From: Leucoraja erinacea
Taxonomy: Eukaryota
Reading direction: 5' to 3'
NCBI RefSeq assembly: GCF_028641065.1
Contig: NC_073412.1
Span: 1,736,001-1,800,000, forward strand
Length of the DNA stretch: 64,000 bases
The translations under genes and the position numbers were made by a program. Shown one piece after another: positions 9,790 through 27,697 of this stretch (its first letter is position 1; each line of letters begins with the position of its first letter). Under the pieces are notes generated by a model. It ran no database searches and had not been told where the DNA came from. It saw nothing but the letters and a program-made list of their open reading frames with translations.

Positions 9790-10020
9790 AATTGGGCGAG
9801 TGCGTGTGTGCCCGTGTGCATGCGCGGGGGAGTGTGTAAGAGGGTGTGTGCTAGTGCGTGCGCATGTGCACACGCGTGTGAGAATGCGCGGGGGATTGTG
9901 TGAGGGTGTGTGTGTGTGCACGCGTGTGCGTGCAAGTGTGGGCGTGCGAGTGTGTGCGAGTGTGCAAGGGCACAGATGAGTGAGAGGAGCGTGACTGGTG
10001 CAGGTTGAACGAGTGTGTGT
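9790..10020. repeat. Degenerate (GT)n microsatellite
   Basis: Direct inspection; adjacent to N runs 8826-9288 and 9512-9781. Confidence 0.9.
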
Positions 10021-10817: not shown

Positions 10818-11779
10818 TTACAGCGCGTGCAGCGCCGGAGATCCGGGTTCAATCCCAACTACGGGTGCTGTCTGTACGGAGTTTGCACGTTCTCCCCGTG
10901 ACCTGCACAGGGTTTCTCTGAGATCTTCGGTTTCTTCCCACACTCCAAAGACGTGCAAGTTTGTAAGTTAATTGGCTTGTTGTACGTGTAAATTGTCCCT
11001 AGCGTGTGTTACTCAGTTACTCCAGCATTTTGTGTCTATCTTTAAGGTTTCAATTGACGACACAAATGTCTGTCTCCACAGACGTTGCCTGGTCTGATGG
11101 CTATAACCATATAACCATTACAGCACGGAAACAGGCCATCTCGACCCTTCTAGTCCGTGCCGAACACATAATCTCCCCTAGTCCCATATACCTGCGCTCA
11201 GACCATAACCCTCCATTCCCTTCCCGTCCATATAACTATCCAATTTATTTTTAAATGATAAAACGAACCTGCCTCCACCACCTTCACTGGAAGCTCATTC
11301 CACACAGCTACCACTCTCTGAGTAACGAAGTTCCCCCTCATGTTACCACTAAACTTCAGTCCCTTAATTCTCAAGTCATGTCTCCTTATGACTATGTTCA
11401 ACAAATTCCAAATTAATTTAGATCTCTATCATTCTGTTGCCTCCTGTTTTGGCATTGAAGAACTGTGTAATTAACCCTGGGAGGAGATAAACACAGTGTT
11501 GAGAAAATACAGGCTATGGATAGTGGGGCTGTGTGGGGTGAAATTGCATTTAAAAAACGCACTGGAATTTTTGATCTGTAAGGAATATTGAAAAGTATAT
11601 GTAGACATTAGGAACTGCAGATGGTGGTTTATTTTAAAAAAAAAGGCAAAGTGCTGGAGTAACTCAGCGGGTCAGGCAGCATCTCTGGAGAACATGAATA
11701 GGCGACGCTTTGAGCTGCGGCTTTGCCTGCGATAGCTGGTGGGGCAATGGTGCCAAATTAGTACCGGTAGATGATCTGC

Positions 11780-12310
11780 AGATCTATCAGAGGAAGGATA
11801 TGCTGGCCTTGGAGAGAGTCCAGAGGAGGTTTACAAGAACGATCCCAGGAATCAGAGGGTTTACCTATGATGAGCGTTTGTCGGCATTGGGCCTGTACTC
11901 GCTGGAGTTTAGAAGAATGAGTGGGGAGGGGCGGGGGCTGATTGAAAAGTACAGAATAGTGAAAGACTTGGATAGAGTGGATGTGGAGAGGATGTTTCCA
12001 CTAGTGGGAGAGTCTAGGACTAGAGGCCACAGCCTCAGAATTAAAGGATGTTCTTTTAGGAAGGAGATGAGGAGGAATTTCTTTAGTCAGAGGGTGGTGA
12101 ATCTGTGGAATTCTTTGCCACAGTTGGCTGTGGAGGCCACAAGTCAGTGGATATTTTGAAGGCAGAGATAGATAGATTCTTGATTAGTGTGTGTGTGTGT
12201 CAGAGGTTATGGGGAGAAGGCAGGAGAATGGAGTTGGGAGGTAGAGATAGATCAGGCATGATTGAATGGCAGAGTAGACTTGATGGGCTGAATGGCCTAA
12301 TTTTACTATC
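11780..12310 (+). mobile_element. CR1 LINE 3' fragment
   Basis: LERVQRRFTRTIPG...VVNLWNSLPQ plus 3' UTR. Confidence 0.88.
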
Positions 12311-13667
12311 ACTTATGACCAGGCAGCATCTCTAGAGAGAAGGAATGAGTTAGTGTTTCTTCTATCTAACTTCAATCGTGGATTTCTCGGTGATGGCAGC
12401 TTTCTCTTTAATTTGCAGTAAAATATTTCTAATAACCACCCACTTGAGCAGGTGATGGGATGTGTGTGATCACACAGTGGCCTGTAGCACAGCTGGTAGT
12501 CAACACATTATTATTATTCATCCAAAGACAGAAATATTTGTCTGATGAAAAGGAATCAGTAGCTCAGATGGAAAGCTGGTATCTTTGGTGTTAGGTTTTA
12601 GAGATACAGCGTGGTAAACAGGCCTGTAGAGTCTGCACCGACCACACATTAACACTATCCTATACACAAGGGGTTGCCAACATTACTCATCCCGTTTGCC
12701 CCAGGCAACTTTAATAGCACATATCAAAGTTATTTTCTTTTTTTGTAAAGTATTTTTATTAGAAGCATGTACACAAATAATAGTGAGTGACAATTTAATT
12801 ACTGATTTCTTACAAAGCTTCAGTTTTTAACAATGTTATTTTCATTTATTTATCAACAACTAATAATGAACAGATACCGCACCGATCAATGAGAACAAAT
12901 ATCCAGAGTTACCCCTGGGGCTAAATATACTGTAGGTTGGGAAACCTTTATACACACTATACACACACTACGGACAATTTACACACACACCAAGCCAGTG
13001 GATCTACTAACCTGTACGTCTTTGGAGTGTGAGAGGAAACCGAAGATCTCGGAGAAAAGTCACGGGGAGAACGTGCAAACTCCGTACAGACAGCGCCCGT
13101 AGTCGGGATCGAACTTGGATCTCCGGTGCTGCAAGCGCTGTAAGGCAGCGACTCTACCGCTGCGCCACCGTGACCGCCCTAAAGTTGTCTCTCTCTGGTG
13201 CTGGGATGACCTTCGGACGAGAGAAAATATTTTGTGCTTGCACGAGGTTTGATTCACACCCTGGTGCTCTCTGTTCGACACTTTGCAATTTGTAGGCTGG
13301 TGTTGCTCCCAGATTTGCCAGCCAACCTGCTGTAACAAATGGTGGCTATCACCAGCGCTGGCAGGTCATTACCAGAGTAACAGACACAACTGTAACAGCA
13401 GCGGGATTATCTGCATCATCTCCACACTGTTACTCACCGCTCCATGTCCGACCTCTTATCTTGCTGCAGATGAGTAACGTTAATGCGTTATTGACTGAGT
13501 AGAGAGCGACGGGCTTGTTGGCAGATGGGACACGGGACGGGTAGCGTTGCAAAGATTATCGCAGTGGTTGGATGAGGCTATCCATTAAGTTAACGCTGGC
13601 GGTGAATGTAATAACACGCTGGTGCAGCGGTAGTGTTGCTGCCTTACAGCGTGTACAGACAGCACTC

Positions 13668-14112
13668 AGAGTTACTCCAGCACTCTGTGACACGTCACTT
13701 ATCCATGTTCGCCACATATGCTGCCTGACCCGCTACGTTACTCCAGCACTCTGTGAAACGTCACCTATCCATTTTTCTCCACAGATGCTGCCTGACCCGC
13801 TGAGTTATGGTGCAGCAGCATCTATGGAGCGAAGGAAATAGGCAACGTTTCGGGCCAAAACCCTTCTGGAAATAGGCAACGTTTCGGTCCGAAACCCGGA
13901 AGGGTTTCGGCCCGAAACGTTGCCTATTTCCTTAGCTCCATAGATGCTGCTGCACCCGCTGAGTTACTCCAGCACTCTGTGAAACGTCACCTATCCATGT
14001 TCTCCACAGATGCTGCCTGACCAGCTGGGTTACTCCAGCACTCTGTGAAACGGCACCTATCCATGTTCTCCACAGATGCTGCCTGACCCGCTGAGTTACT
14101 CCAGCACTCTGT
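13668..14112. repeat. Tandem array of a ~66-bp Penelope-end unit with an inverted insert
   Basis: About five copies of ctgtgaaacgtcacctatccatgttctccacagatgctgcctgacccgctgagttactccagcact. Confidence 0.8.
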
Positions 14113-14957
14113 GTGTCCTTTTACAAAATAAACTAAACGCTGACCAAAACTAAAATGTCCAGCGACGTTGGTGCTGTTGTCAAACATGGCTTTTGACTCA
14201 TTCGCAAAGAATTACACGCAGCTAGACTTAATTTCCGCACCTTTTGCCAAACGCTTCAGAAACTAAAATCCTTGGCAAATGTTCCGTCCTCAGAAGCTGC
14301 CCGAACTCATGAATCTTTAATGTTAATCCCCAGTTTTTATTTCAAATCCCATGCGCTTTGCAGTTAAGCAGGAACTTGGAGCCCAGAGGGGAAGCTATCT
14401 AATGATTGCACGATACTGTATGGAGTAATCCCACACAAACTGGGACTCTAACTTAACTTAACCATGGAGTGTGAGCCTGTTTTATTCATCGTATTAATTA
14501 TACAGTGAAGCCTTATGGAACCATCATCATCAATGAGGAATATTAGAATAACTCGAAAGTCTTGCAGATATCTGGAATAAACCAGCAGCATCATTGCATT
14601 TTACCGGGCTGCATCACAGCATGGTTTGGGATGTGGGAGGAATCTGGAGCTCCTGAAAGAAACGGGGATAACATGCAAACTCCGTACAGACAGTATAGAA
14701 TCTGTATAGAGTTTGTGTGTTCTCCCTGTCTCCACGTGTAAAAGTTTCATGTATTCAAGAGAGATAGCTAACGGAATCGAGGGATATGGGGAGAAAGCAG
14801 GAACGGGGTACTGATTGTGGATGATCAGCCATGATCATATTGAATGGGGGTTCTGGCTCGAAGGGCCGAATGGCCTCTACTCCTGCACCTATTTTCTATG
14901 TTTCTGTTTTGTGCTGCTGGCTTCCTTCACTGATGAATTCTCTTTCAATGCTTGCAG

Positions 14958-15308
14958 GAGCTCTGGACATCCAGGTTCCAATGGACCCAGTGATTGCCCG
15001 CTACGGGGAAGACGTGACACTGAACTGCACGTTCACCAGCGAGGGCAACTTCTCCCTGGGGGATGTGAGTGTGATCTGGCAGCTGACAGAGACCAAGACC
15101 ATGGTGCACAGCTACTCGCAGCAGTGGGAAGTGCAGAGCGACCAGGCGGACAGCTTTGTCAACCGGACCGCACTGTTCATGGACCAGCTGGGCAAGGGCA
15201 ACGCCTCGCTGCTGTTGAGGAATGTGAAGATTGAAGATGAAGGCAGCTTCACCTGCTTTGTCCGTGTCCTAGACTACAACAGTGCCCCCATCATGCTCCA
15301 ACTCGCAG
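14958..15308 (+). CDS. CD276: CD276/B7-H3 IgV exon (351 nt, phase 1-1)
   Basis: ttgcAG acceptor and G|GTACAA donor. Encodes GALDIQVPMDPVIARYGEDVTLNC...IWQLTETKTMVHSY...NRTALF...GNASLLL...DEGSFTCFV, matching B7-H3 (ALEVQVPEDPV, IWQLTDTKQLVHSF, NRTALF, GNASLRL, DEGSFTCFV). The ORF-track Met at 14831 lies in a LINE tail and is spurious. Confidence 0.96.
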
Positions 15309-15419
15309 GTACAACACTATCCTAAACATACTTCCAAATGTGACGTGGAACATAGAATGTTACAGCACAAAGATACAGGAAAGATATTGTCAATCTTCAA
15401 AGGGTTCAGTAAAGATTTA

Positions 15420-15752
15420 AAGCCCTGTCCCAGGGTACGAGTTCATTCCAAGAGCTCTACCTCCCGAGTTTGCCCTGATTCGAACGCGGAGATTTACGGT
15501 AATGTCCACTCGTCGGTACTCGGGGCTCTCGTGGACATTTTGCAACGTTGAAAAATCTTCACGAGTCTTCCCGTGATTACCTGCCGTCAGCGAGTCTTCC
15601 CGAGTACCTGCCGTTAGCGTTACGAGCCGCTAAGAGACGTCCCCGAGCTCCGACGTACCCGCTACGTTCATTCTCCGCGCTTACCACGAGTTTGATTTTT
15701 TTTTAAACTCGGGAGATCTCTTGGAATGAACTCGTACCGTGAGACAGGGCTT
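15420..15752. mobile_element. PIF/Harbinger-type MITE (333 bp)
   Basis: TIR AAGCCCTGTC..GGTACGAGTTCATTCCAAGAG and TSD TTA (15417-15419, 15753-15755); splits a CR1 ORF2 fragment (RVQ*RF|TRMLPG). Confidence 0.85.
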
Positions 15753-16205
15753 TTACGAGGATGTTGCCAGGACTAGAGGGTGTGAGCTGCTATAGGGAGA
15801 GGTTGAGTAGGCTTGGGTCTCTATTCCATGGAGGATGAGGGGGATCTTATAGAGGTGTATAAAATCATGAGAGGAATAGATCGGGTAGATGCACAGAGTC
15901 TCTTGCCCAGAGTAGGGGAATCGAGGACCAGAGGACACAGGTTCAAGGTGATTGGGAAAAGATTTAATAGGAATCTAAAGGGTAACTTTTTCACACAAAG
16001 GGTGGTGGGTGTATGGAACGAGCTGCCAGAGGAGATAGTTGAGGCTGGGACTATCCCAATGTTTAAGAAGCAGTTGGATAGGTACATGGATAGGACGGGT
16101 TTGGAGGGATATGGACCAAGAGGAGGCAAATGTGTAGCTGGGACATGTTGGTCGGTGTGGGCGAGTTGGGCCAAAGGGACTGTTTCCATACTGTATCACT
16201 CTATG
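15753..16205 (+). mobile_element. CR1 LINE 3' fragment (second subfamily)
   Basis: GDLIEVYKIMRGIDRVD...RVVGVWNELP. Confidence 0.88.
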
Positions 16206-16799
16206 ACACAAGAAGTTACCCTTCGGCCCACAATGTCTGTGCTGAACATGATGTCAAGACCATCTTTTATCTGCCTGTCTGAGATCCATTTCCCTTCATT
16301 CCCTGCAAGTGTGTCAATCTAAATGCCGCCAAAATATCTGCCTTCACCACCACCCCTGGCAGCGTGCTCCTGGGATTCATCACTCTCTGTGTAAAAAATG
16401 TGTAATCACTCTCTTCCTATTTGATTGTTCCATCCTAGGGGAAAAGGCTCAGGCTGTCTACCTTATCTACGCATCTTATTATTTTATATACTATTATCAA
16501 GTCTCCCTTCAATCTTCAACATTTTATGTTTGTTTGTGATAGGAGCAGAATTTGGCCATTCGGCCCATCAAGTCTGCTCCGCCATTCAATCATGGCTGAT
16601 CTATCATAAAAACATAGAAACATAGAAATTAGGTGCAAGAGTAGGCCATTCGGCCCTTCGAGCCTGCACCGCCATTCAATATGATCATGGCTGATCATCC
16701 AACTCAGTATCCCGTACCTACCTCCCCCAACATCGGGAACAATCTTCCTGCATCTAGCCTGTCCAACCCCTTAAGAATTTCTCCCTCCTATCTCTCCCT

Positions 16800-17175: not shown

Positions 17176-17468
17176 AAACCTTCTCTTTCTTATTTATTAA
17201 TTCATCCTAGATTAACCCAAAGCTGCAGCTTCTTATTAGACAAAGAAACATAGACAATAGGAGCAGGAGTAGGCCATTCGGCCCTTCGAGCCAGCACCGC
17301 CATTCAATAAGATCATGGCTGATCATCCAGAATCAGTACCCTGTTCCTGCTTTCTTCCCATATCCATTGGTTCCATTAGCCCCAGGAGCTAAGTCTAACT
17401 CTCTGTTGATGGGGCACGAGCCCTCAGATGTGGGTCCACCATGCTGATGCTCCTACCTCTTCTTTCAG

Positions 17469-17765
17469 CCTCTTACTCCAAGCCCAACCTGCACCTGGAG
17501 CCCAGCAAGAACCTGAAGCCTGGAGATGAGGTGAGCATTGCGTGCCATTCCTCAGGGGGCTACCCGCAGGCAACGGTGCTGTGGTTTGACGGGAAGGGGG
17601 GCAACGTGACGGAGAATGTCAGCACCTCGCAGGTGGCCAACGAGCGGGGCCTGTTTGAGGTGAGCAGCGTGATGAGAGTCACCCTGGAGCCCAACAGCTC
17701 GTACAGCTGCACGGTGAGGAACAAGCTACTGGGAGAGGAGACCCATGCTGCAGCGACAATCACAG
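17469..17765 (+). CDS. CD276: CD276/B7-H3 IgC exon (297 nt, phase 1-1)
   Basis: cttctttcAG acceptor and G|GTCAGT donor. Encodes ASYSKPNLHLEPSKNLKPGDEVSIAC...GGYPQATVLW...NVSTSQVANERGLFEV...YSCTVRN...TITG, matching the B7-H3 IgC (YSKPSMTLEPNKDLRPGD, SQMANEQGLFDV). Confidence 0.96.
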
Positions 17766-19769
17766 GTCAGTCCCACCTCACCACCACGCCCAACACCCTC
17801 CTCTCCTCTCCTCTACCCACCAATGCTAACATGCACATCCCACACGGTATGGAACAAGCTGCCAGAGCAGGTAGTTGAGGCTGGGACTATCCCAACGTTT
17901 AAGAATGGTCCCTGTGGCTAAAGGGATCAGGGGGTATGGAGAGAAGGCAGGGTTGGGATACTGAGTTGGATGATCAGCCATGATCATGTTGAATGATATT
18001 GTACTCGCTAGAATTTAGAAGATTGAGGGGGGATCTTATAGAAACTTACAAAATTCTTAAGGGGTTGGACAGGCTAGATGCAGGAAGATTGTTCCTGATG
18101 TTGGGGAAGTCCAGAACAAGGGGTCACACAGTTTAAGGATAAGAGGGAAATCTTTTAGGACTGAGATGAGAAAAACATTTTTCACACAGAGAGTGGTGAA
18201 TCTGTGGAATTCTCTGCCACAGAAGGTAGTTGAGGCCACACAGTTCATTGGCTATATTTAAGAGGGAGTTAGATGTGGCCCTTGTGGCTAAAGGGATCAG
18301 GGGGTATGGAGAGAAGGCAGGGTTGGGATACTGAGTTGGATGATCAGCCATGATCATATCGAATGGCGGTGCAGGCTCGAAGGGCCGAATGGCCTCTACT
18401 CCTGCACCTATTTTCTATGTTTCTATGTAAGAAACAGTTAGACAGGTACATGGATAGGACAGGTTCGGAGGGATATGGACCAAACGCAGGCAGGTGGGAC
18501 TAGTGTAGCTGGGACATGTTGGCCGGTGTGGGCAAGATGGGCCAAAGGGCCTGTTTCCACACTGTATCACTCTAAGACACTATCTGCCGCCTGAGATCAG
18601 ATGCCATTACTGAAACCCGAAATGAGACGAGAGTAATATCTGGTGAAAATTGTGATTTTCGTAAGCTTATTGGATTTGAAAAGCTCCACTTAATGCCGTG
18701 TAAGTTCGAGGAGGGCTGTTTGAATCTGTATTTACAAGCACACATGCAAAATGGTCTTAAAAGACATGATTGTTACTGTGTGATTGATGTGGAATCCACT
18801 GGGTCCTGGGCCCTGTCACATTGACATTAGATCAAAGGTTTGATTGATGGAACCTTCTGGTTCATTCCGCAATCATCTATCTTGCCCGTTAATGGCTGAG
18901 TGTGTAATCCCGCTGATATTAAATGCCGTTGACTAGCCAAATATTAAGGGAGCTAAACTGACAGGGAAACTTTAGACGAAGGAACCTGGCCTCTAACAAG
19001 GTGGAAATATCCACCTGAGACCCATCCCTGAAGTCAGCCTTTAGTTCTGTTAACATACAGAGGGAATTATTAACTAAATGCTACATGTATAAAGCAAGTT
19101 GGAAGAGCAACGTGTTTGAGGAATATAGAATTCTACAGCGGAAATGTTCCATCTGGAATCCCTCTGGTTTTAACACTAATGGAATGAAAGGATATATTTA
19201 AGGCAGAGATGGATAGATTTTTGATTAGTGCGGGTGTCAGGGGTTATGGGGAGAAGGCAGGAGAATGGGGTTAGGAGGGAGAGATAGATCAACCATGATT
19301 TGAATGGCGGAGTAGACTCGATGGGCCGAATGGCCTAATACTGCTCCTATCACTTAAGACCGGATAGAGTGGATGTGGAGAGGATGTGTCCACCAGTGGG
19401 AAGTCTAGACCATAGGTCGTAGAAACATAGAAAATAGGTGCAGGAGTAGAGGCCATTCGGCCCTTCGAGCCTGCACCATTCGCCATTCAATATGATCATG
19501 GCTGATCATCCAACTCAGTATCCTGTACCTGCCTTCTCTCCATACCCCCTGATCCCTTTAGCCGCAAGGGCCACATCTAACTCCCTCTTAAATATGTCAT
19601 AGCCTCAGAATTAAAGGGCGTTCCTTCAGGAAGATGAGGAGGGATTTCTTTCGTCAGAGGGTGGTGAATCTGTGGAATTCATTGCCACGGAAGGCTGTGG
19701 AGGCCAAGTCAGTGGATTTTTTTTTTAAATGCTGGAGTAACTCAGCGGGTGAGGCAGCATCTCTGGAGA

Positions 19770-22547: not shown

Positions 22548-23044
22548 TTTAGAAACATAGAAAATAGGTGCAGGAGGAGGCCATTCGGCCCTTTGAGCCA
22601 GCACCGCCATTCATTGTGATCATGGCTGATCGTCCCCAATCAATAACCCGTGCCTGCCTTCTCCCCATATCCCTTGACTCCACTAGCCCCTAGAGCTCTA
22701 TCTAACCCTCTTAAACCCATCCAGTGATTTGGCCTCCACTGCCCTCTGTGGCAGGGAATTCCACAAATTCACAACTCTCTGGGTGAAAACGTTTTTTCTC
22801 ACCTCAGGCTTAAATGGCCTCCCCTTTATTCTAAGACTGTGTGGCCCCTGGTTCTGGACTCGCCCAACATTGGGAACATTTTTCCTGCATCTAGCTTGTC
22901 CAGTCCTTTAATAAATTTATATGTTTCTATAAGATTCTCCCCTCATCCTTCTAAACTCCAGTGAATACAAGCCTAGTCTTTTCAATCTTTCTTCATATGA
23001 CAGTCCCGCCATCCCAGGGGCCAATCTGGTGAACCTACGCTGCA
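22548..23044 (-). mobile_element. CR1 LINE fragment split by the P-like element (continues at 26850-26915)
   Basis: ...GAACCTACGCTGCA | ACGCTGCACTGCCTCAATCACAAGGATGTCC reconstitutes the continuous LINE sequence seen at 34681-34730. Confidence 0.85.
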
Positions 23045-23144
23045 CAAAGATCGTAGAGGGACAAGATAGACCACTCCTCGAAAAACGCGTAGTATGACGT
23101 GTGTGACCGTCGACGCCATATTGTTAAGCATTTATTGGGCTGTA

Positions 23145-23254
23145 ATGGCGTCCTCAGCTAAATCTTCATCTCACTGCTCCGCTATCAAGTATTCTAATCG
23201 TAAATCTAAACGACCCAACCTGTCATTCTTTAGGTTCCCCAATAAAAAAGAAAG
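23145..23254 (+). pseudogene. THAP-domain exon 1 of the transposase (MASSAKSSSHCSAIKYSNRKSKRPNLSFFRFPNKKER)
   Basis: THAP N-terminal pattern C-x4-C...SFFRFP...ER, with the second Cys read as Tyr (TAT). Ends at a phase-2 donor AG|GTGAGA. No downstream THAP or catalytic exon was found. Confidence 0.75.
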
Positions 23255-23624
23255 GTGAGAAAATATTTTTATTATTTTCAGTCGATATTCTGTCGTGAAA
23301 ATGGTATTTTCTGTTCTCCCATCAACGGCCATTGGGAAACATTAGTCGGTACATTAGAAAGTTCTTAGACTTATTTTTAATAGTTCTTTACTCACCACAA
23401 TAATAAAGACAATTTTAACACTTCTGTACGTTTTTGGTTTTGTTTTGTAAGGGATTAGTCTGCACAATATGGCCCGCGGACACATTAGGTCCAGTGACCA
23501 GGAGATTTTTCGAGTCCGAGAATGGGCGGCTGTTACCCATTATATTCCTCGAACATAGGGACATAGCAAACAACACTCACATACATACAAGACATCACAA
23601 GCCCGCCGTGAAGAAGGGTGCAAT

Positions 23625-23657
23625 CAAATATTATATAACTCTGCTCTATCATCTTTG
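23625..23657. mobile_element. 33-bp P-like fused-termini remnant (footprint)
   Basis: CAAATATTATATAACTCTGCTCTATCATCTTTG flanked by a perfect 8-bp direct repeat GGTGCAAT (23617-23624, 23658-23665). Confidence 0.7.
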
Positions 23658-23709
23658 GGTGCAATGGTGGGTCGGGGAGGTCGGCAGCAGTGGCGGCGAT
23701 GGTCGCAAT

Positions 23710-23745
23710 CAAATATACTAGTGGAGCTCTGCTCTATAATCTTTG
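23710..23745. mobile_element. 36-bp P-like fused-termini remnant (footprint)
   Basis: CAAATATACTAGTGGAG+CTCTGCTCTATAATCTTTG flanked by GTCGCAAT / GTCGTAAT (7 of 8 match). Confidence 0.7.
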
Positions 23746-23930
23746 GTCGTAATGGGACGGCTGCGCGTTATAATGTGCTNNNNNNNNNNNNNNNNNNNNN
23801 NNNNNNNNNNNNNNNNNNNNNNNNNNNNNNNNNNNNNNNNNNNNNNNNNNNNNNNNNNNNNNNNNNNNNNNNNNNNNNNNNNNNNNNNNNNNNNNNNNNN
23901 NNNNNNNNNNNNNNNNNNNNNNNNNNNNNN

Positions 23931-24245
23931 CCTGTCCCCTTCTCCCTCCCCCCTTCTCCCTGTCCCCCCCTTTTCCCTTCTCCCTCCCCCTTCTCCCTCT
24001 CCCCCTTGTCCCTGTCCCCCTTCTCCCTGTGTCCCCCCCCCCCTCCCCCCCCCCCTTCTCCCTCTCCCCCTTCTCCCTCTCCCCCCTCCCTCTTTCGATC
24101 TCTCTCTCTCTCCTCCCCTCCTCTCCTCTCTCGCTCTCCCTCTCTTCTCTCTCTCTTCTCTCTCTCTCTCTCTCTCTCCCTCCCCTCTTCGCGATCTCCT
24201 TCCCTTCCCTCTCTCCCACCCTTCCATCTCTCCCTCCCTTACCTC
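23931..24245. repeat. Polypyrimidine (CT-rich) tract
   Basis: Direct inspection. Confidence 0.9.
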
Positions 24246-24763
24246 TCCGTGAGAGTTGGCAGCTCTGCTATGCCTTGGGTCCAAAAGAGGATAGATAGAA
24301 AATACTTAATTGTCTTTGTAAGAAGATTTTAATAAGCTCTTCTACATTTAAGGTAAATTGACATATTAGAGGCAAAACACATTTTCAATATACAGGTCTC
24401 TCCACACAACTGAAAACAATTGCATTTAAGTGATATATCATCCATTGTTCAGGCAAGTAGCACTAGGTTACAATAAACTTCCTGCATATTCCAGGAATTC
24501 ATCTCATAAAAATGGGAGAGGCTTAAATGCATTGTAAAATCATAAATCCATGTTGACTTGGACTAATCCTTTTACTGCTATCCAAATGCCCCATTATTAC
24601 ATCTTTAATAATTGACTCCAGCATCTTTCACACCACCAAAGTCAGGCTAACTGGTCTGTAATTCCCCATTTTCTCTCTCGCTCCTTTCTTGAAAAGTGGG
24701 ATAGCATTAGCTATCCTCCAATCCACAGGAACTGATCGTAAATCTATTGATCGTTGGAAAATA

Positions 24764-25935
24764 ATAGAAACATAGAAATAGAAATTAGGTGCAGGAGTAG
24801 GCCATTCGTCCCTTCGAGCCTGCACCGCCATTCAATATGATCATGGCTGACCATCCAACTCAGTATCCCGTACCTGCCTTCTCTCCATACCCTCTGATCC
24901 CCTTAGCCACAAGGGCCACATCTAACTCCCTCTTAAATATAGCCAATGAACTGGCATCGACTACCCTCTGCGGCAGAGAGTTCCAGAGATTCACCACTCT
25001 CTGTGTGAAAAAGGTTCTTCTCATCTCGGTTTTAAAGGATTTCCCCCTTATCCTTAAGCTGTGACCCCTTGTCCTGGACTTCCCCAACATCGGGAGCAAT
25101 CTTCCTGCATCTAGTCTGTCCAACCCCTTAAGAATTTTGTAAGTTTCTATAAGATCCCCTCTCAATCTCCTAAATTCTAGAGAGTATAAACCAAGTGTAT
25201 CCAGTCTTTCTTCATAAGACAGTCCTGACATCCCAGGAATCAGTCTGGTGAACCTTCTCTGCACTCCCTCTATGGCAATAATGTCCTTCCTCAGATTTGG
25301 AGACCAAAACTGTACGCAATACTCCAGGTGTGGTCTCACCAAGACCCTGTACAACTGCAGTAGAAACTCCCTGCTCCTATACTCAAATCCTTTCGCTATG
25401 AAAGCTAACATACCATTCGCTTTCTTCACTGCCTGCTGCACCTGCATGCCTACTTTCAATGACTGGTGTACCATGACACCCAGGTCTCGCTGCATCTCCC
25501 CTTTTCCTAGTCGGCCGCCATTTAGATAATAGTCTGCTTTCCTGTTTTTGCCACCAAAATGGATAACCTCACATTTATCCACATTATACTGCATCTGCCA
25601 AACATTTGCCCACTCACCCAGCCTATCCAAGTCACCTTGCAGTCTCCTAGCATCCTCCTCACAGCTAACACTGTCCCCCAGCTTAGTGTCATCCGCAAAC
25701 TTGGAGATATTGCCTTCAATTCCCTCATCCAGATCATTAATATATATTGTAAATAGGTGGGGTCCCAGCACTGAGCCTTGCGGTACCCCACTAGTCACTG
25801 CCTGCCTAATGAAGAACTCAACCATATTATGGTCACTCTTGCCCAAGGGGGCAGTACAACAAGATTGCTAACTAACCCTTCCTCATTACTCAATACCCAG
25901 TCTAAAATAGCCTGCTCTCTCGTTGGTTCCTCTAC
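24764..25935 (-). mobile_element. HER1/CR1-clade LINE, internally deleted, nested in the P-like element
   Basis: 328-aa ORF 24860-25846 with SGVPQGSVLGP, FADDTK and LVRPHLEYCVQFWSP. An endonuclease-region piece (GKSDHNMVEF) is fused to the RT region; (CTATGTTT)-type tail. A further RT fragment lies at ~24590-24763. Confidence 0.92.
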
Positions 25936-25944
25936 ATGTTAATC

Positions 25945-26070
25945 ATATGTATAAATATATATGTATGTGTATATATATGCATGTATATGTATATGTGTGT
26001 ATATATGTATGTATATATATGTTTATATGTGTGTATGTATGCATATAAATGTATCCATATGTATGTGTGT
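25945..26070. repeat. (TA/TG)n microsatellite
   Basis: Direct inspection. Confidence 0.9.
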
Positions 26071-26447
26071 NNNNNNNNNNNNNNNNNNNNNNNNNNNNNN
26101 NNNNNNNNNNNNNNNNNNNNNNNNNNNNNNNNNNNNNNNNNNNNNNNNNNNNNNNNNNNNNNNNNNNNNNNNNNNNNNNNNNNNNNNNNNNNNNNNNNNN
26201 NNNNNNNNNNNNCCTTTATGGTTTATGTATATCATCTTACAAGACAAATAAATTAATAGTGATGATTTAAATCAAAGTAGCTTCTGATACATGAGAATAA
26301 ACTATTATCTCTAACTTGCCTCTCACACACAGACACACATTCATATAAATATATAAATATATATACGTTAAATTTAATTTTTTGCAGTTTTTGCAATACA
26401 ATGTGGGTGAGGGTCTGTTTACAAGCTTGAGGATCTTTGCTTTGGAT

Positions 26448-26475
26448 CAAAGATTATAGCGGAGGAAAATCTTTG
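26448..26475. mobile_element. 28-bp P-like fused-termini remnant (footprint)
   Basis: CAAAGATTATAGCGGAG+GAAAATCTTTG flanked by CTTTGGAT / CTTTGAAT (7 of 8 match). Confidence 0.6.
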
Positions 26476-27697
26476 CTTTGAATACAGCGGGTGGAATACC
26501 GGAAGTCGAGTGTCGGTAACAAATCTGACGTTCCCGCTACACGTCAGATGAACTTCGAGGATCTATCTTGCGATCTTTGACGGCACTGCCTCAATCAAAG
26601 GATGTCCTTCCCTCAAATTAGGCTGTACACAATACAATCTTTAAGAGCTCTCTAGCTCTCTCTTAATCCAGAGAATTTCCACTGCTTTGCCAGTGCTCAC
26701 ATCTGCAGCCTCCTCAGACAGCCTATCTTTCAAGAATGGTCACATAGGAAGTCGAGTGTCGCTGTAACAAATTGACGTTCCGTTGCGTACTACACGTCAG
26801 CCCATTGAATTTCGAAGGAGTGGTCTATCTTGTCCCTCTACGATCTTTGACGCTGCACTGCCTCAATCACAAGGATGTCCTTCCTCAAATTAGGAAACCA
26901 AAACTGTACACAATACAATCTTTAAGAGCTCTATCTAGCTCTCTCTTGAAAGCATCCAGAGAATTGGCCTCCACTGCCTTCTGAGGCAGAGAGTTCGTTG
27001 CAGCCAGTGCTGTGCTAGATAAATCTGCAGCCTCAGACAGCCTATCTTTCAAGTAATGGGCTCTGCCTTGGTCAACATAGAGTGTAAAATCTTTGTCTGC
27101 CGACTGCTATACCATACGGTGGAAGCACAGTGGCCCTGGTTATTGAAGCTGTGTTAGAGGATTAAGTGGGATCCAGTCCCACTTTCGGCTTTGCTATATC
27201 TTAGTAGAGATATAATTCTAAATTCTCTTAACTTGGCAAACCAGCACTAAACTGCGATTTATCAGAGTATTCTGCAAAAAGTGACAAACTTCACCTTTTC
27301 TCAATCCACTCCTGCTGTGTCGACCCAGAACCGACATCAGAGGTCAATAGACAAAGACTAAAAATAGGCTAGCCTGATCCGGTCAAAGCTGCCCGCAAGT
27401 CCTGACAGAAAATTGACGTATTTCACCTTTATCTTCCTTCACTCCAGTTATTTTTGCTGAAGTACTTTGTAGGGGAAGGCAACGCAGAGGCTGGAAATCT
27501 AAAAATAAAACGAGGGGAGGTNNNNNNNNNNNNNNNNNNNNNNNNNNNNNNNNNNNNNNNNNNNNNNNNNNNNNNNNNNNNNNNNNNNNNNNNNNNNNNN
27601 NNNNNNNNNNNNNNNNNNNNNNNNNNNNNNNNNNNNNNNNNNNNNNNNNNNNNNNNNNNNNNNNNNNNNNNNNNNNNNNNNNNNNNNNNNNNNNNNN

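What the first reader, a model, noticed from the sequence alone, without database searches (positions are those of the whole stretch)
23045..26849. Young P-element-like THAP transposon in an elasmobranch intron
Seen: perfect 34-bp TIRs starting CAAAG, an exact 8-bp TSD (ACGCTGCA), a CR1 LINE split cleanly at that TSD, and 100 bp inside the left end a THAP first exon (HCSAIK[Y]SN...LSFFRFPNKKER|GTGAGA). Known: a THAP N-terminus, ~30-bp CA...TG TIRs and 8-bp TSDs characterise the P superfamily (Drosophila P, zebrafish Pdre, domesticated THAP9); THAP12-type hAT elements also combine THAP with 8-bp TSDs. Inference: this is a recently mobile, internally deleted copy, which implies an autonomous transposase elsewhere in the genome. 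I do not know whether this family has been described.
Basis: partly seen in the sequence, partly recalled or inferred. Interest (0 to 1): 0.8.

Follow-up and report, generated by a model that had tools for sequence, protein, structure and literature searches.

The report
Dead P-element-type transposon copy in skate
This is a real but crippled copy of a P-element-type "cut-and-paste" transposon in the little skate genome, belonging to a family that moved fairly recently in skates and has a surprisingly close relative in a priapulid worm.

Summary
Window 23045-26849 has perfect 34-bp terminal inverted repeats (TIRs) and an exact 8-bp target-site duplication (TSD, ACGCTGCA). Removing the element restores one continuous LINE sequence.

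The superfamily call also holds. The 37-codon exon, 100 bp inside the left end, has no Pfam or PDB match alone. It is 83% identical to the start of a little skate protein with a full THAP domain. Three more copies in the little skate assembly share the left 100 bp at 99-100% over the bases they keep; one is complete, with both TIRs and an 8-bp TSD. A longer, decayed relative in the same genome carries every P-specific transposase domain, including the GTP-binding insertion. No hAT domain was found.

The window copy is non-autonomous:
- about 5.8 kb is deleted, including the rest of the THAP domain and the transposase;
- the second zinc-binding Cys is Tyr;
- a younger LINE is nested inside.

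Both assembly gaps lie in tracts that other copies also have. A garbled duplicate of the right end (26497-26745) is probably an assembly artefact. No intact autonomous copy was found. "Young" is only relative, and "intron" and "CR1" remain untested.

Side lead: a Priapulus caudatus copy is about 85% identical in DNA to skate copies, suggesting horizontal transfer. The scan has not reported this family on other DNA.

The parts
23037..23044 (.). Left copy of the 8-bp target-site duplication (ACGCTGCA)
   Evidence: empty-site reconstruction
23045..23078 (+). Left 34-bp terminal inverted repeat (starts CAAAG)
   Evidence: identical or 1 mismatch in L002/L003
23079..23144 (+). Left subterminal region / 5' leader. 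It holds a TGACGTGT motif mirrored at the right end. The first 100 bp of the element are 99-100% identical in other copies.
23145..23254 (+). Remnant of THAP exon 1 (37 codons, last one split; donor GT at 23255-23256). The second zinc-ligand Cys is mutated to Tyr, and an Asn is changed to Lys.
   Evidence: no Pfam or PDB hit on its own
23255..23779 (+). Intron-1-derived sequence of the family. It includes two palindromic units that resemble TIR tips (about 23620-23667 and 23705-23755).
23780..23930 (.). Assembly gap inside the family's CT-rich tract
23931..24255 (.). CT-rich low-complexity tract, also present in L003 and L007
24256..24461 (+). Sequence that precedes THAP exon 2 in longer copies (24330-24455 matches L003 10856-10981). 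It ends at the left breakpoint of the internal deletion.
24462..24539 (.). About 75 bp of filler at the deletion junction. It matches neither side in L003. The deletion removes L003 ~10981-16798: THAP exon 2, exon 3 and everything downstream.
24540..24769 (-). Old LINE reverse-transcriptase N-terminal fragment shared by all copies of the family (94% to L002-L004)
24770..25940 (-). Copy-specific nested 5'-truncated LINE (RVT_1 ORF 24860-25846). It is absent from L003/L004 at this point and 96-97% identical to LINE copies elsewhere in the skate genome.
25941..26070 (.). TG/TA microsatellite, a family feature also present in L003 17037-17269
26071..26212 (.). Assembly gap inside the microsatellite region
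26213..26496 (+). Right internal region with TIR-tip-like palindromes (about 26420-26480). It pairs as a 20-nt inverted repeat with 23729-23748.
   Evidence: (I5)
26497..26745 (+). Deletion-riddled duplicate of the right end, the TSD and about 135 bp of LINE flank. Probably an unmerged low-quality overlap beside the gap (assembly artefact).
26746..26815 (+). Right subterminal region
26816..26849 (-). Right 34-bp terminal inverted repeat
26850..26857 (.). Right copy of the 8-bp target-site duplication
22548..23036 (-). Left part of the LINE 3' fragment that received the insertion. It continues at 26858-26917.

Best explanation
Window 23045-26849 is a non-autonomous, internally deleted copy of a P-superfamily (THAP9 / P-element-type) DNA transposon of the little skate.

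Shown:
- It inserted by cut-and-paste into a LINE fragment and made an 8-bp target-site duplication.
- Its ends are 34-bp terminal inverted repeats shared with other copies in the same genome.
- About 5.8 kb present in longer copies is missing, with about 75 bp of filler at the junction.
- A younger LINE sits inside it.
- Longer relatives in the same genome encode THAP, a linker, the P-type helix-turn-helix, and an RNase H domain split by the GTP-binding insertion.

Inferred:
- The copy was mobilised in trans by a transposase of that type, which recognises the TIRs and subterminal sites.
- The internal deletion arose by interrupted gap repair, as in Drosophila P derivatives.
- The copy can no longer make any useful protein.
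- It could move only if a working transposase still exists.
For: - TIRs, TSD and a clean empty site.
- Exon homology: the exon scores E=6.6e-7 at 83% identity to P0001 (Leucoraja erinacea) in a library of 1.8 billion proteins. P0003 shares even the upstream leader residues.
- Domains in relatives: all hits have Pfam THAP. Several have Tnp_P_element, and one also TNP-like_RNaseH_N, mostly just under the Pfam cut-offs.
- Sister copies: L002, L003 and L004 come from assembly GCA_028641065.1. Their left 100 bp are 99-100% identical to the window over the bases they keep (L004 lacks the first 10). They are about 91% identical to the window overall and about 98% identical to each other.
- Second complete copy: L003 has both TIRs and the 8-bp TSD CTTCAGAC.
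- Long relative: L007, from the same genome, is 86-90% identical in DNA to L003-type copies over shared parts. It holds PF12017 (31.6 bits), PF21787 (126), PF21788 GTP-binding insertion (39.9) and PF21789 (28.4).
- Link to the Drosophila enzyme: the related intact core P0015 matches Drosophila P transposase structure 6P5A at E=3.4e-43.
- Cys-to-Tyr change.
- Published P-element hallmarks for comparison (31-bp TIRs, 8-bp TSD, THAP N-terminus, internally deleted derivatives): PMC7776569. Zebrafish Pdre2: PMC10983969.
Against: - No copy was found that has both these TIRs and an intact transposase gene.
- L007, the transposase-bearing copy, is broken into at least five reading frames. Its left tip is replaced by a right-end copy and its right end was not found.
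- The link from these TIRs to the P-type core therefore runs through 86-90% DNA identity between L003-type copies and L007, not through one single element.
- Only two complete copies give TSD lengths.
- The exon alone has no significant THAP hit.
- Read-level support for the junctions could not be obtained.
Confidence: 0.9

Rival explanations
1. It is a hAT-superfamily element with a THAP N-terminus (THAP12-type). hAT elements also make 8-bp TSDs.
Against: Every longer relative of the exon that extends beyond the THAP domain and linker, apart from the chimeric TRIM gene models, carries P-type domains: PF12017, PF21787, PF21788, PF21789. None carries a hAT dimerisation or DUF4371 domain. The core matches the P transposase structure 6P5A.
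Confidence: 0.02
2. The copy is an old, fixed relic rather than a recently mobile element. The perfect ends reflect the slow substitution rate of cartilaginous fishes or chance.
For: - The interior is 5-8% diverged from sister copies.
- The THAP exon carries inactivating changes.
- A LINE has inserted inside.
- By my own calculation, 84 unmutated end sites only bound the divergence since insertion to about 3.6% or less per site at the 5% level.
- No autonomous copy was found.
Against: - Perfect TIRs and TSD.
- Sister copies L002-L004 differ from one another by only 0.6-1.0% substitutions and lie on different chromosomes, so the family moved recently.
- The interior divergence may be subfamily difference that predates this insertion.
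Confidence: 0.35
3. The element structure is partly an assembly artefact: the two gaps and the duplicated right end mean the 3.8-kb element is stitched from different copies.
For: - Two N gaps lie inside the element.
- 26213-26745 has 5 substitutions but 16-17 gap openings against L003, and duplicates the junction.
- No public run was listed for the right-junction words.
Against: - Order and orientation of all pieces match the other copies.
- Both junctions carry the same TSD, and the two flanks rebuild one LINE.
- The garbled duplicate shows the same junction a second time.
Confidence: 0.1

Closest known systems
Drosophila melanogaster P element and its internally deleted derivatives
   Same: - Long perfect TIRs (31 bp there, 34 bp here) and an 8-bp TSD.
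- A multi-exon transposase gene that starts about 100 bp inside the left end with a THAP domain.
- The same domain order in the family's long copy: helix-turn-helix, then RNase H split by a GTP-binding insertion.
- Non-autonomous copies made by internal deletion (PMC7776569).
   Different: - No DNA similarity, and different TIR sequence.
- The host is a vertebrate.
- The long copies seen here are 6-8 kb, swollen by nested LINEs and simple repeats.
- GTP dependence and the 17-nt staggered cut were not testable.
Zebrafish Pdre2 / zfTHAP9 P-like transposon
   Same: - A vertebrate P-like element with an 8-bp TSD.
- Multiple internally deleted copies.
- Subterminal inverted repeats a few hundred bp inside the ends (PMC10983969; PMC7776569). 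Here, TIR-tip-like inverted repeats lie about 575-700 bp from the left end and about 370-430 bp from the right end.
   Different: - Pdre2 has 13-bp TIRs with a different sequence; here they are 34 bp.
- The skate family sits in a different clade. Its nearest intact cores are unnamed Logan/ENA proteins, and its nearest named relatives are partial proteins from a second skate, Priapulus and, more distantly, teleosts.
- No intact skate transposase was found.
Domesticated THAP9 genes of tetrapods
   Same: Homologous transposase architecture: THAP plus the P-type core.
   Different: THAP9 is single-copy and has no TIRs or TSDs (PMC7776569). The skate sequences are multi-copy, TIR-bounded, decayed and at different loci.
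THAP-bearing hAT derivatives (THAP12 / PRKRIR type)
   Same: A THAP N-terminus, and 8-bp TSDs in the hAT superfamily. Some relatives are auto-named '52 kDa repressor of the inhibitor of the protein kinase-like'.
   Different: No hAT dimerisation or DUF4371 domains were found. The core is P-type. The automatic names reflect the THAP domain only.

Membership tests
P superfamily of DNA transposons | Terminal inverted repeats bounding the element | tested here: met
   Perfect 34-bp TIRs with 0 expected by chance. The same TIRs occur in L002 and L003.
P superfamily of DNA transposons | 8-bp target-site duplication | tested here: met
   Window: ACGCTGCA. L003: CTTCAGAC. Only two complete copies were available.
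P superfamily of DNA transposons | Transposase with an N-terminal THAP domain | tested here: met
   Family members P0001, P0003 and P0011 have Pfam THAP at E 1e-12 to 1e-17. The window copy keeps only a mutated first exon.
P superfamily of DNA transposons | P-type helix-turn-helix, and an RNase H catalytic domain interrupted by a GTP-binding insertion domain | tested here: met
   L007 (same genome, same family at 86-90% DNA identity to L003-type copies): PF12017 31.6 bits, PF21787 126, PF21788 39.9, PF21789 28.4, all above cut-offs. It covers P0015 residues 3-668 in tblastn. P0015 matches 6P5A at E=3.4e-43. The L007 gene is frame-broken.
P superfamily of DNA transposons | One element carrying both these TIRs and the P-type transposase (autonomous copy) | tested here: inconclusive
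   Not found among the loci fetched or in three protein searches. The skate genome could not be searched by DNA with these tools.
P superfamily of DNA transposons | GTP-dependent transposition with a 17-nt staggered donor cut | not testable with these tools
   This is a biochemical property (PMC7776569).
hAT superfamily | hAT transposase (BED or THAP N-terminus plus DDE core with a C-terminal hAT dimerisation domain, DUF4371 in some) | tested here: not met
   Pfam scans of all relatives and of the L007 reading frames gave only P-type domains.
THAP zinc-finger domain (for the window's own exon) | C2CH zinc ligands and the C-terminal AVPTIF box | tested here: not met
   The first Cys is present. 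The second is Tyr, where all eight homologues have Cys. The third Cys, the His and the AVPTIF box lie in exon 2, which is deleted here. There is no Pfam or PDB hit. The exon is a remnant of a THAP domain, not a domain.

The most novel reading that the evidence does not exclude
The family has been active in rajid skates until very recently: three copies about 98% identical overall (0.6-1.0% substitutions) lie on different chromosomes. It also belongs to a P-element lineage that crossed animal phyla by horizontal transfer. A Priapulus caudatus copy is about 85% identical in DNA, and 72% in protein, to skate copies. That is as close as copies from two skate genera are to each other. More distant relatives occur in hagfish, moray eel, pipefish, sea urchins and octopus. 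If an intact source copy exists, this would be a second mobile vertebrate P element after zebrafish Pdre2.
Probability: 0.5. Interest if true: 0.65.

Novelty: new member of a known kind. Interest (0 to 1): 0.45.

Why it matters
Mobile P-type elements are textbook in flies. In vertebrates, the characterised mobile case named in the papers read here is zebrafish Pdre2, and tetrapods keep only the domesticated THAP9 gene.

A TIR-bounded, multi-copy P-like family in a cartilaginous fish has fly-like long TIRs and copies that differ by less than 1% in substitutions. This extends the record of P-element mobility in vertebrates. It also gives natural ends and relatives for testing THAP9-type transposases.

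The near-identity with a priapulid copy, if confirmed, would be a cross-phylum horizontal transfer of a P element in the sea.

For genome annotation, the family produces misleading gene models: 'THAP2-like' proteins, and a THAP-TRIM chimera named TRIM55-like.

The particular copy in the window is itself an inert relic.

Tried and rejected
- Pfam and PDB searches with the 37-aa exon alone found nothing, even at E up to 1 and 10.
- Rfam on 20-30 kb found nothing.
There is therefore no read-level check of the junctions, the duplicate right end, copy number or insertion polymorphism.
- The look-up of sequencing runs gave three results:
  - The left end is held by many DNA and some RNA runs of two coded organisms.
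  - The left-junction 60-mer had too few indexed words.
  - For the right-junction 60-mer, none was listed. This is not evidence of absence.
- L001 (the intact core P0015, from a Logan contig of unknown organism) has no DNA similarity to the window and lacks ends.
- The L007 right end was not found. Only an inverted right-end fragment lies 24 kb away.
- The Amblyraja copy L006 has a TIR-like left tip 96 bp before its ATG, but no matching right TIR within the locus.
- Searches for an intact skate transposase found none closer than about 70%.
- Pfam scans of long ORFs downstream of the element found no host exon.
- The literature searches found no paper on P-like elements in Leucoraja.
- The hAT reading was considered and rejected.
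Full report
**1. What is in the window**

The two arms 23045-23078 and 26816-26849 are perfect 34-bp inverted repeats beginning CAAAG. They are the only matches in 64 kb at up to three mismatches, and none occurred in 100 shuffles. Weaker complementarity continues to 58 nt.

The octamer ACGCTGCA flanks both ends. I removed the element and one octamer. The joined flanks then align across the junction, without a gap, to an independent copy of the same LINE family at 24770-25320 (79% over 559 bp). This is the signature of a cut-and-paste insertion into a pre-existing LINE fragment.

The LINE encodes a reverse transcriptase (RVT_1). I could not test whether it is CR1.

**2. The assembly gaps**

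The gap at 23780-23930 lies in a CT-rich tract. The gap at 26071-26212 lies in a TG/TA microsatellite. Other copies of the family have the same tracts at the same positions, and the sequences on either side are collinear with those copies. I see no sign of a misjoin, and no reading frame crosses a gap. The gaps were not filled.

One piece does look unreliable. The stretch 26213-26745 differs from copy L003 by only 5 substitutions but 16-17 gap openings, whereas the left end shows 30 substitutions and 6 gaps. Its last 250 bp (26497-26745) repeat the right end, the TSD and about 135 bp of flank with many 2-22-bp deletions.

Substitution-poor, deletion-rich duplication next to a gap is best explained as an unmerged low-quality overlap. 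If so, the true element is about 250 bp shorter. The same junction is seen twice either way.

**3. The exon**

An ATG at 23145, the 101st base of the element, opens 37 codons. They end at a donor AG|GTGAGA, with the exon's last base at 23254. Alone, the exon gives no Pfam or PDB match.

An exhaustive HMMER search of 1.8 billion representative proteins gave nine hits below E=0.001. The key hits:
- **P0001:** 83% identical over the exon. It is a Leucoraja erinacea RefSeq protein.
- **P0003:** shares even the 17 residues upstream of the ATG. It is annotated three times in the little skate.

All nine contain the Pfam THAP domain. Several extend into the P-transposase helix-turn-helix, and one into the start of the RNase H domain, mostly just under the Pfam cut-offs.

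In the alignment, all eight homologues have Cys where the window has Tyr. So the second zinc ligand is mutated in this copy. The exon boundary matches the exon 1/2 junction of the skate gene models.

**4. Other copies in the same genome**

The earlier scan note s1-141734 named the genome as little skate. This agrees with what I found.

The three P0003 loci (L002, L003, L004) come from assembly GCA_028641065.1 and lie on different sequences. How they compare:
- Their first 100 bp are 99-100% identical to the window's over the bases they keep; L004 lacks the first 10.
- The rest is about 91% identical to the window.
- They are about 98% identical to one another, with 0.6-1.0% substitutions.

The state of their ends:
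- **L003** is complete: 7,750 bp, both TIRs, and an 8-bp TSD CTTCAGAC. Both TIRs carry the same G-to-C change at position 9.
- **L002** has lost its right end.
- **L004** has both tips damaged.

Against these copies, the window element differs in two ways:
- It lacks L003 ~10981-16798, which includes THAP exon 2 and exon 3. About 75 bp of unmatched filler sits at the junction.
- It has an extra 1.2-kb 5'-truncated LINE at 24770-25940. That LINE is 96-97% identical to LINE copies elsewhere in the genome.

**5. The transposase**

L007 is the locus of P0001/P0010. It is a more diverged relative, 86-90% identical in DNA to L003-type copies over exon 1, intron 1, exon 2, intron 2, exon 3 and a 3' block. 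L003-type copies lack L007 13018-16328.

That segment, with its surroundings, aligns to residues 3-668 of P0015, an intact 674-aa P-type core. The L007 reading frames score above the Pfam cut-offs for four families:

| Pfam family | Domain | Bits |
|---|---|---|
| PF12017 | Tnp_P_element (HTH) | 31.6 |
| PF21787 | TNP-like RNase H N-terminal | 126 |
| PF21788 | GTP-binding insertion | 39.9 |
| PF21789 | RNase H C-terminal | 28.4 |

P0015 matches the Drosophila P transposase structure 6P5A at E=3.4e-43. No hAT domain appears anywhere. The superfamily is therefore P, not hAT.

L007 is not autonomous:
- The gene is split into at least five frames.
- A right-end copy abuts left-end position 47 at 9947/9948.
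- No right end follows.

The RefSeq models there splice the P-type N-terminus onto TRIM B-box exons, which looks like a chimeric prediction.

An Amblyraja radiata locus (L006) holds another decayed full-length gene. It has a TIR-like tip 96 bp before its ATG but no matching right TIR.

No intact skate transposase turned up in three protein searches. The nearest intact cores (P0015, P0016) are 63-66% identical to the L007 translation and come from unnamed samples. Absence here is weak evidence, because the skate genome could not be searched by DNA.

**6. Mechanism**

The following are shown: the insertion, the TSD, the shared ends, the internal deletion, the nested LINE and the dead exon.

By analogy with Drosophila P and zebrafish Pdre2 (PMC7776569; PMC10983969), I infer:
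- mobilisation in trans by a THAP-bearing, GTP-dependent transposase that binds subterminal sites and the TIRs;
- origin of the deletion by interrupted gap repair.

The ends are much better conserved between subfamilies than the interior. They differ by 0-1% over the outer 100 bp and by 5-8% inside. This fits selection on cis-acting sites.

**7. Age**

Perfect TIRs and TSD mean no change at 84 sites. By my own calculation, this bounds divergence since insertion to about 3.6% or less per site at the 5% level. That is not very tight for a slowly evolving lineage.

The three near-identical sister copies show that the family moved recently. For this particular copy, "young" is plausible but unproven. 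The read-based tests failed.

**8. Context**

An IgV exon (14831-15322) and a butyrophilin-like Ig-C exon (17441-17875) lie upstream on the same strand. No downstream exon was detected. "Intron" is therefore possible but not established.

**9. Side observations**

*TIR-tip-like palindromes.* Short palindromes built from TIR-tip-like 12-17-mers occur at 23620-23667, 23705-23755 and 26420-26480. These are the subject of scan note s1-141733. They are conserved in L003, L004 and L007, and a comparable 23+23 palindrome sits in the Priapulus copy. They are thus family features, not events in this copy. They could be subterminal inverted repeats like those of P and Pdre2, or ancient footprints inherited by all copies.

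*The Priapulus relative.* The Priapulus caudatus locus L005 (P0006, XP_014671368) compares with the skate copies as follows:
- It is 81-86% identical in DNA to skate copies over about 1.1 kb, including some intron sequence.
- It is 72% identical in protein to the Amblyraja copy.
- The two skate genera differ from each other by about as much: 82% in DNA and 66-67% in protein.
- Its 9-kb flank shares no repeats with the skate window, against 127 hits for an Amblyraja flank. Its exon 1 is contiguous with a MARVEL-domain gene. It is therefore not skate contamination.

More distant relatives occur in Myxine, Gymnothorax, Dunckerocampus, Diadema and Octopus. This pattern points to horizontal transfer, but I did not test it formally.

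**10. Verdict**

The copy itself is an inert deletion derivative. The family is a new member of a known kind. I found no paper describing it, and Repbase and Dfam could not be consulted.

Noticed in passing
window 26497-26745 (and the whole piece 26213-26745): A second copy of the right end, the TSD and about 135 bp of flank, full of 2-22-bp deletions. The piece has 5 substitutions but 16-17 gap openings against L003. It is probably an unmerged low-quality overlap beside the gap at 26071-26212, not biology.
   Followed up: partly
window 23620-23667, 23705-23755, 26420-26480; L003 10473-10629 and 17500-17570; L005 14726-14773: Palindromes made of TIR-tip-like 12-17-mers. They are conserved in all skate copies examined, including the diverged L007, and have an analogue in the Priapulus copy. 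They are therefore a family feature (subterminal inverted repeats or ancient inherited footprints), not excision events in this copy.
   Followed up: partly
L005 10001-13818 (Priapulus caudatus scaffold KQ715490.1): A P-like copy 81-86% identical in DNA to skate copies, including some intron sequence. It is as close as copies from two skate genera are to each other. Its flanks share no repeats with skate DNA. This suggests cross-phylum horizontal transfer. More distant relatives occur in hagfish, moray eel, pipefish, Diadema sea urchins and octopus.
   Followed up: partly
L007 9884-9960: A right-end copy of the element abuts position 47 of a left end (head-to-tail junction with the left tip missing), just upstream of the only transposase-bearing skate copy found.
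   Followed up: no
L007 10001-97253 (LOC129716485): RefSeq models named TRIM55-like or uncharacterised splice the P-type THAP N-terminus (up to the start of the HTH) onto B-box/coiled-coil TRIM exons tens of kb away. This is either a chimeric prediction or a transposon-host fusion transcript. Three 'THAP2-like' models (P0003) are likewise transposon remnants with a frameshift in exon 1.
   Followed up: partly
window 14831-15322 and 17441-17875 (+ strand): An IgV exon and a butyrophilin-like Ig-C (C2-set_3) exon of a B7/butyrophilin-type gene, 5-8 kb upstream of the element.
   Followed up: partly
L003 9952-9985 and 17668-17701: Both TIRs of this copy carry the same G-to-C change at position 9, so the two ends stay perfectly complementary. 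This may be a subfamily variant or end homogenisation.
   Followed up: no
L001 (Logan contig from SRR29906530): An intact 674-aa P-type transposase exon, with upstream THAP exon 2 and a linker exon, from an unidentified organism. It is the closest uninterrupted core to the skate family: 66% to L007 overall and 86% over the 36-aa overlap with P0001.
   Followed up: partly
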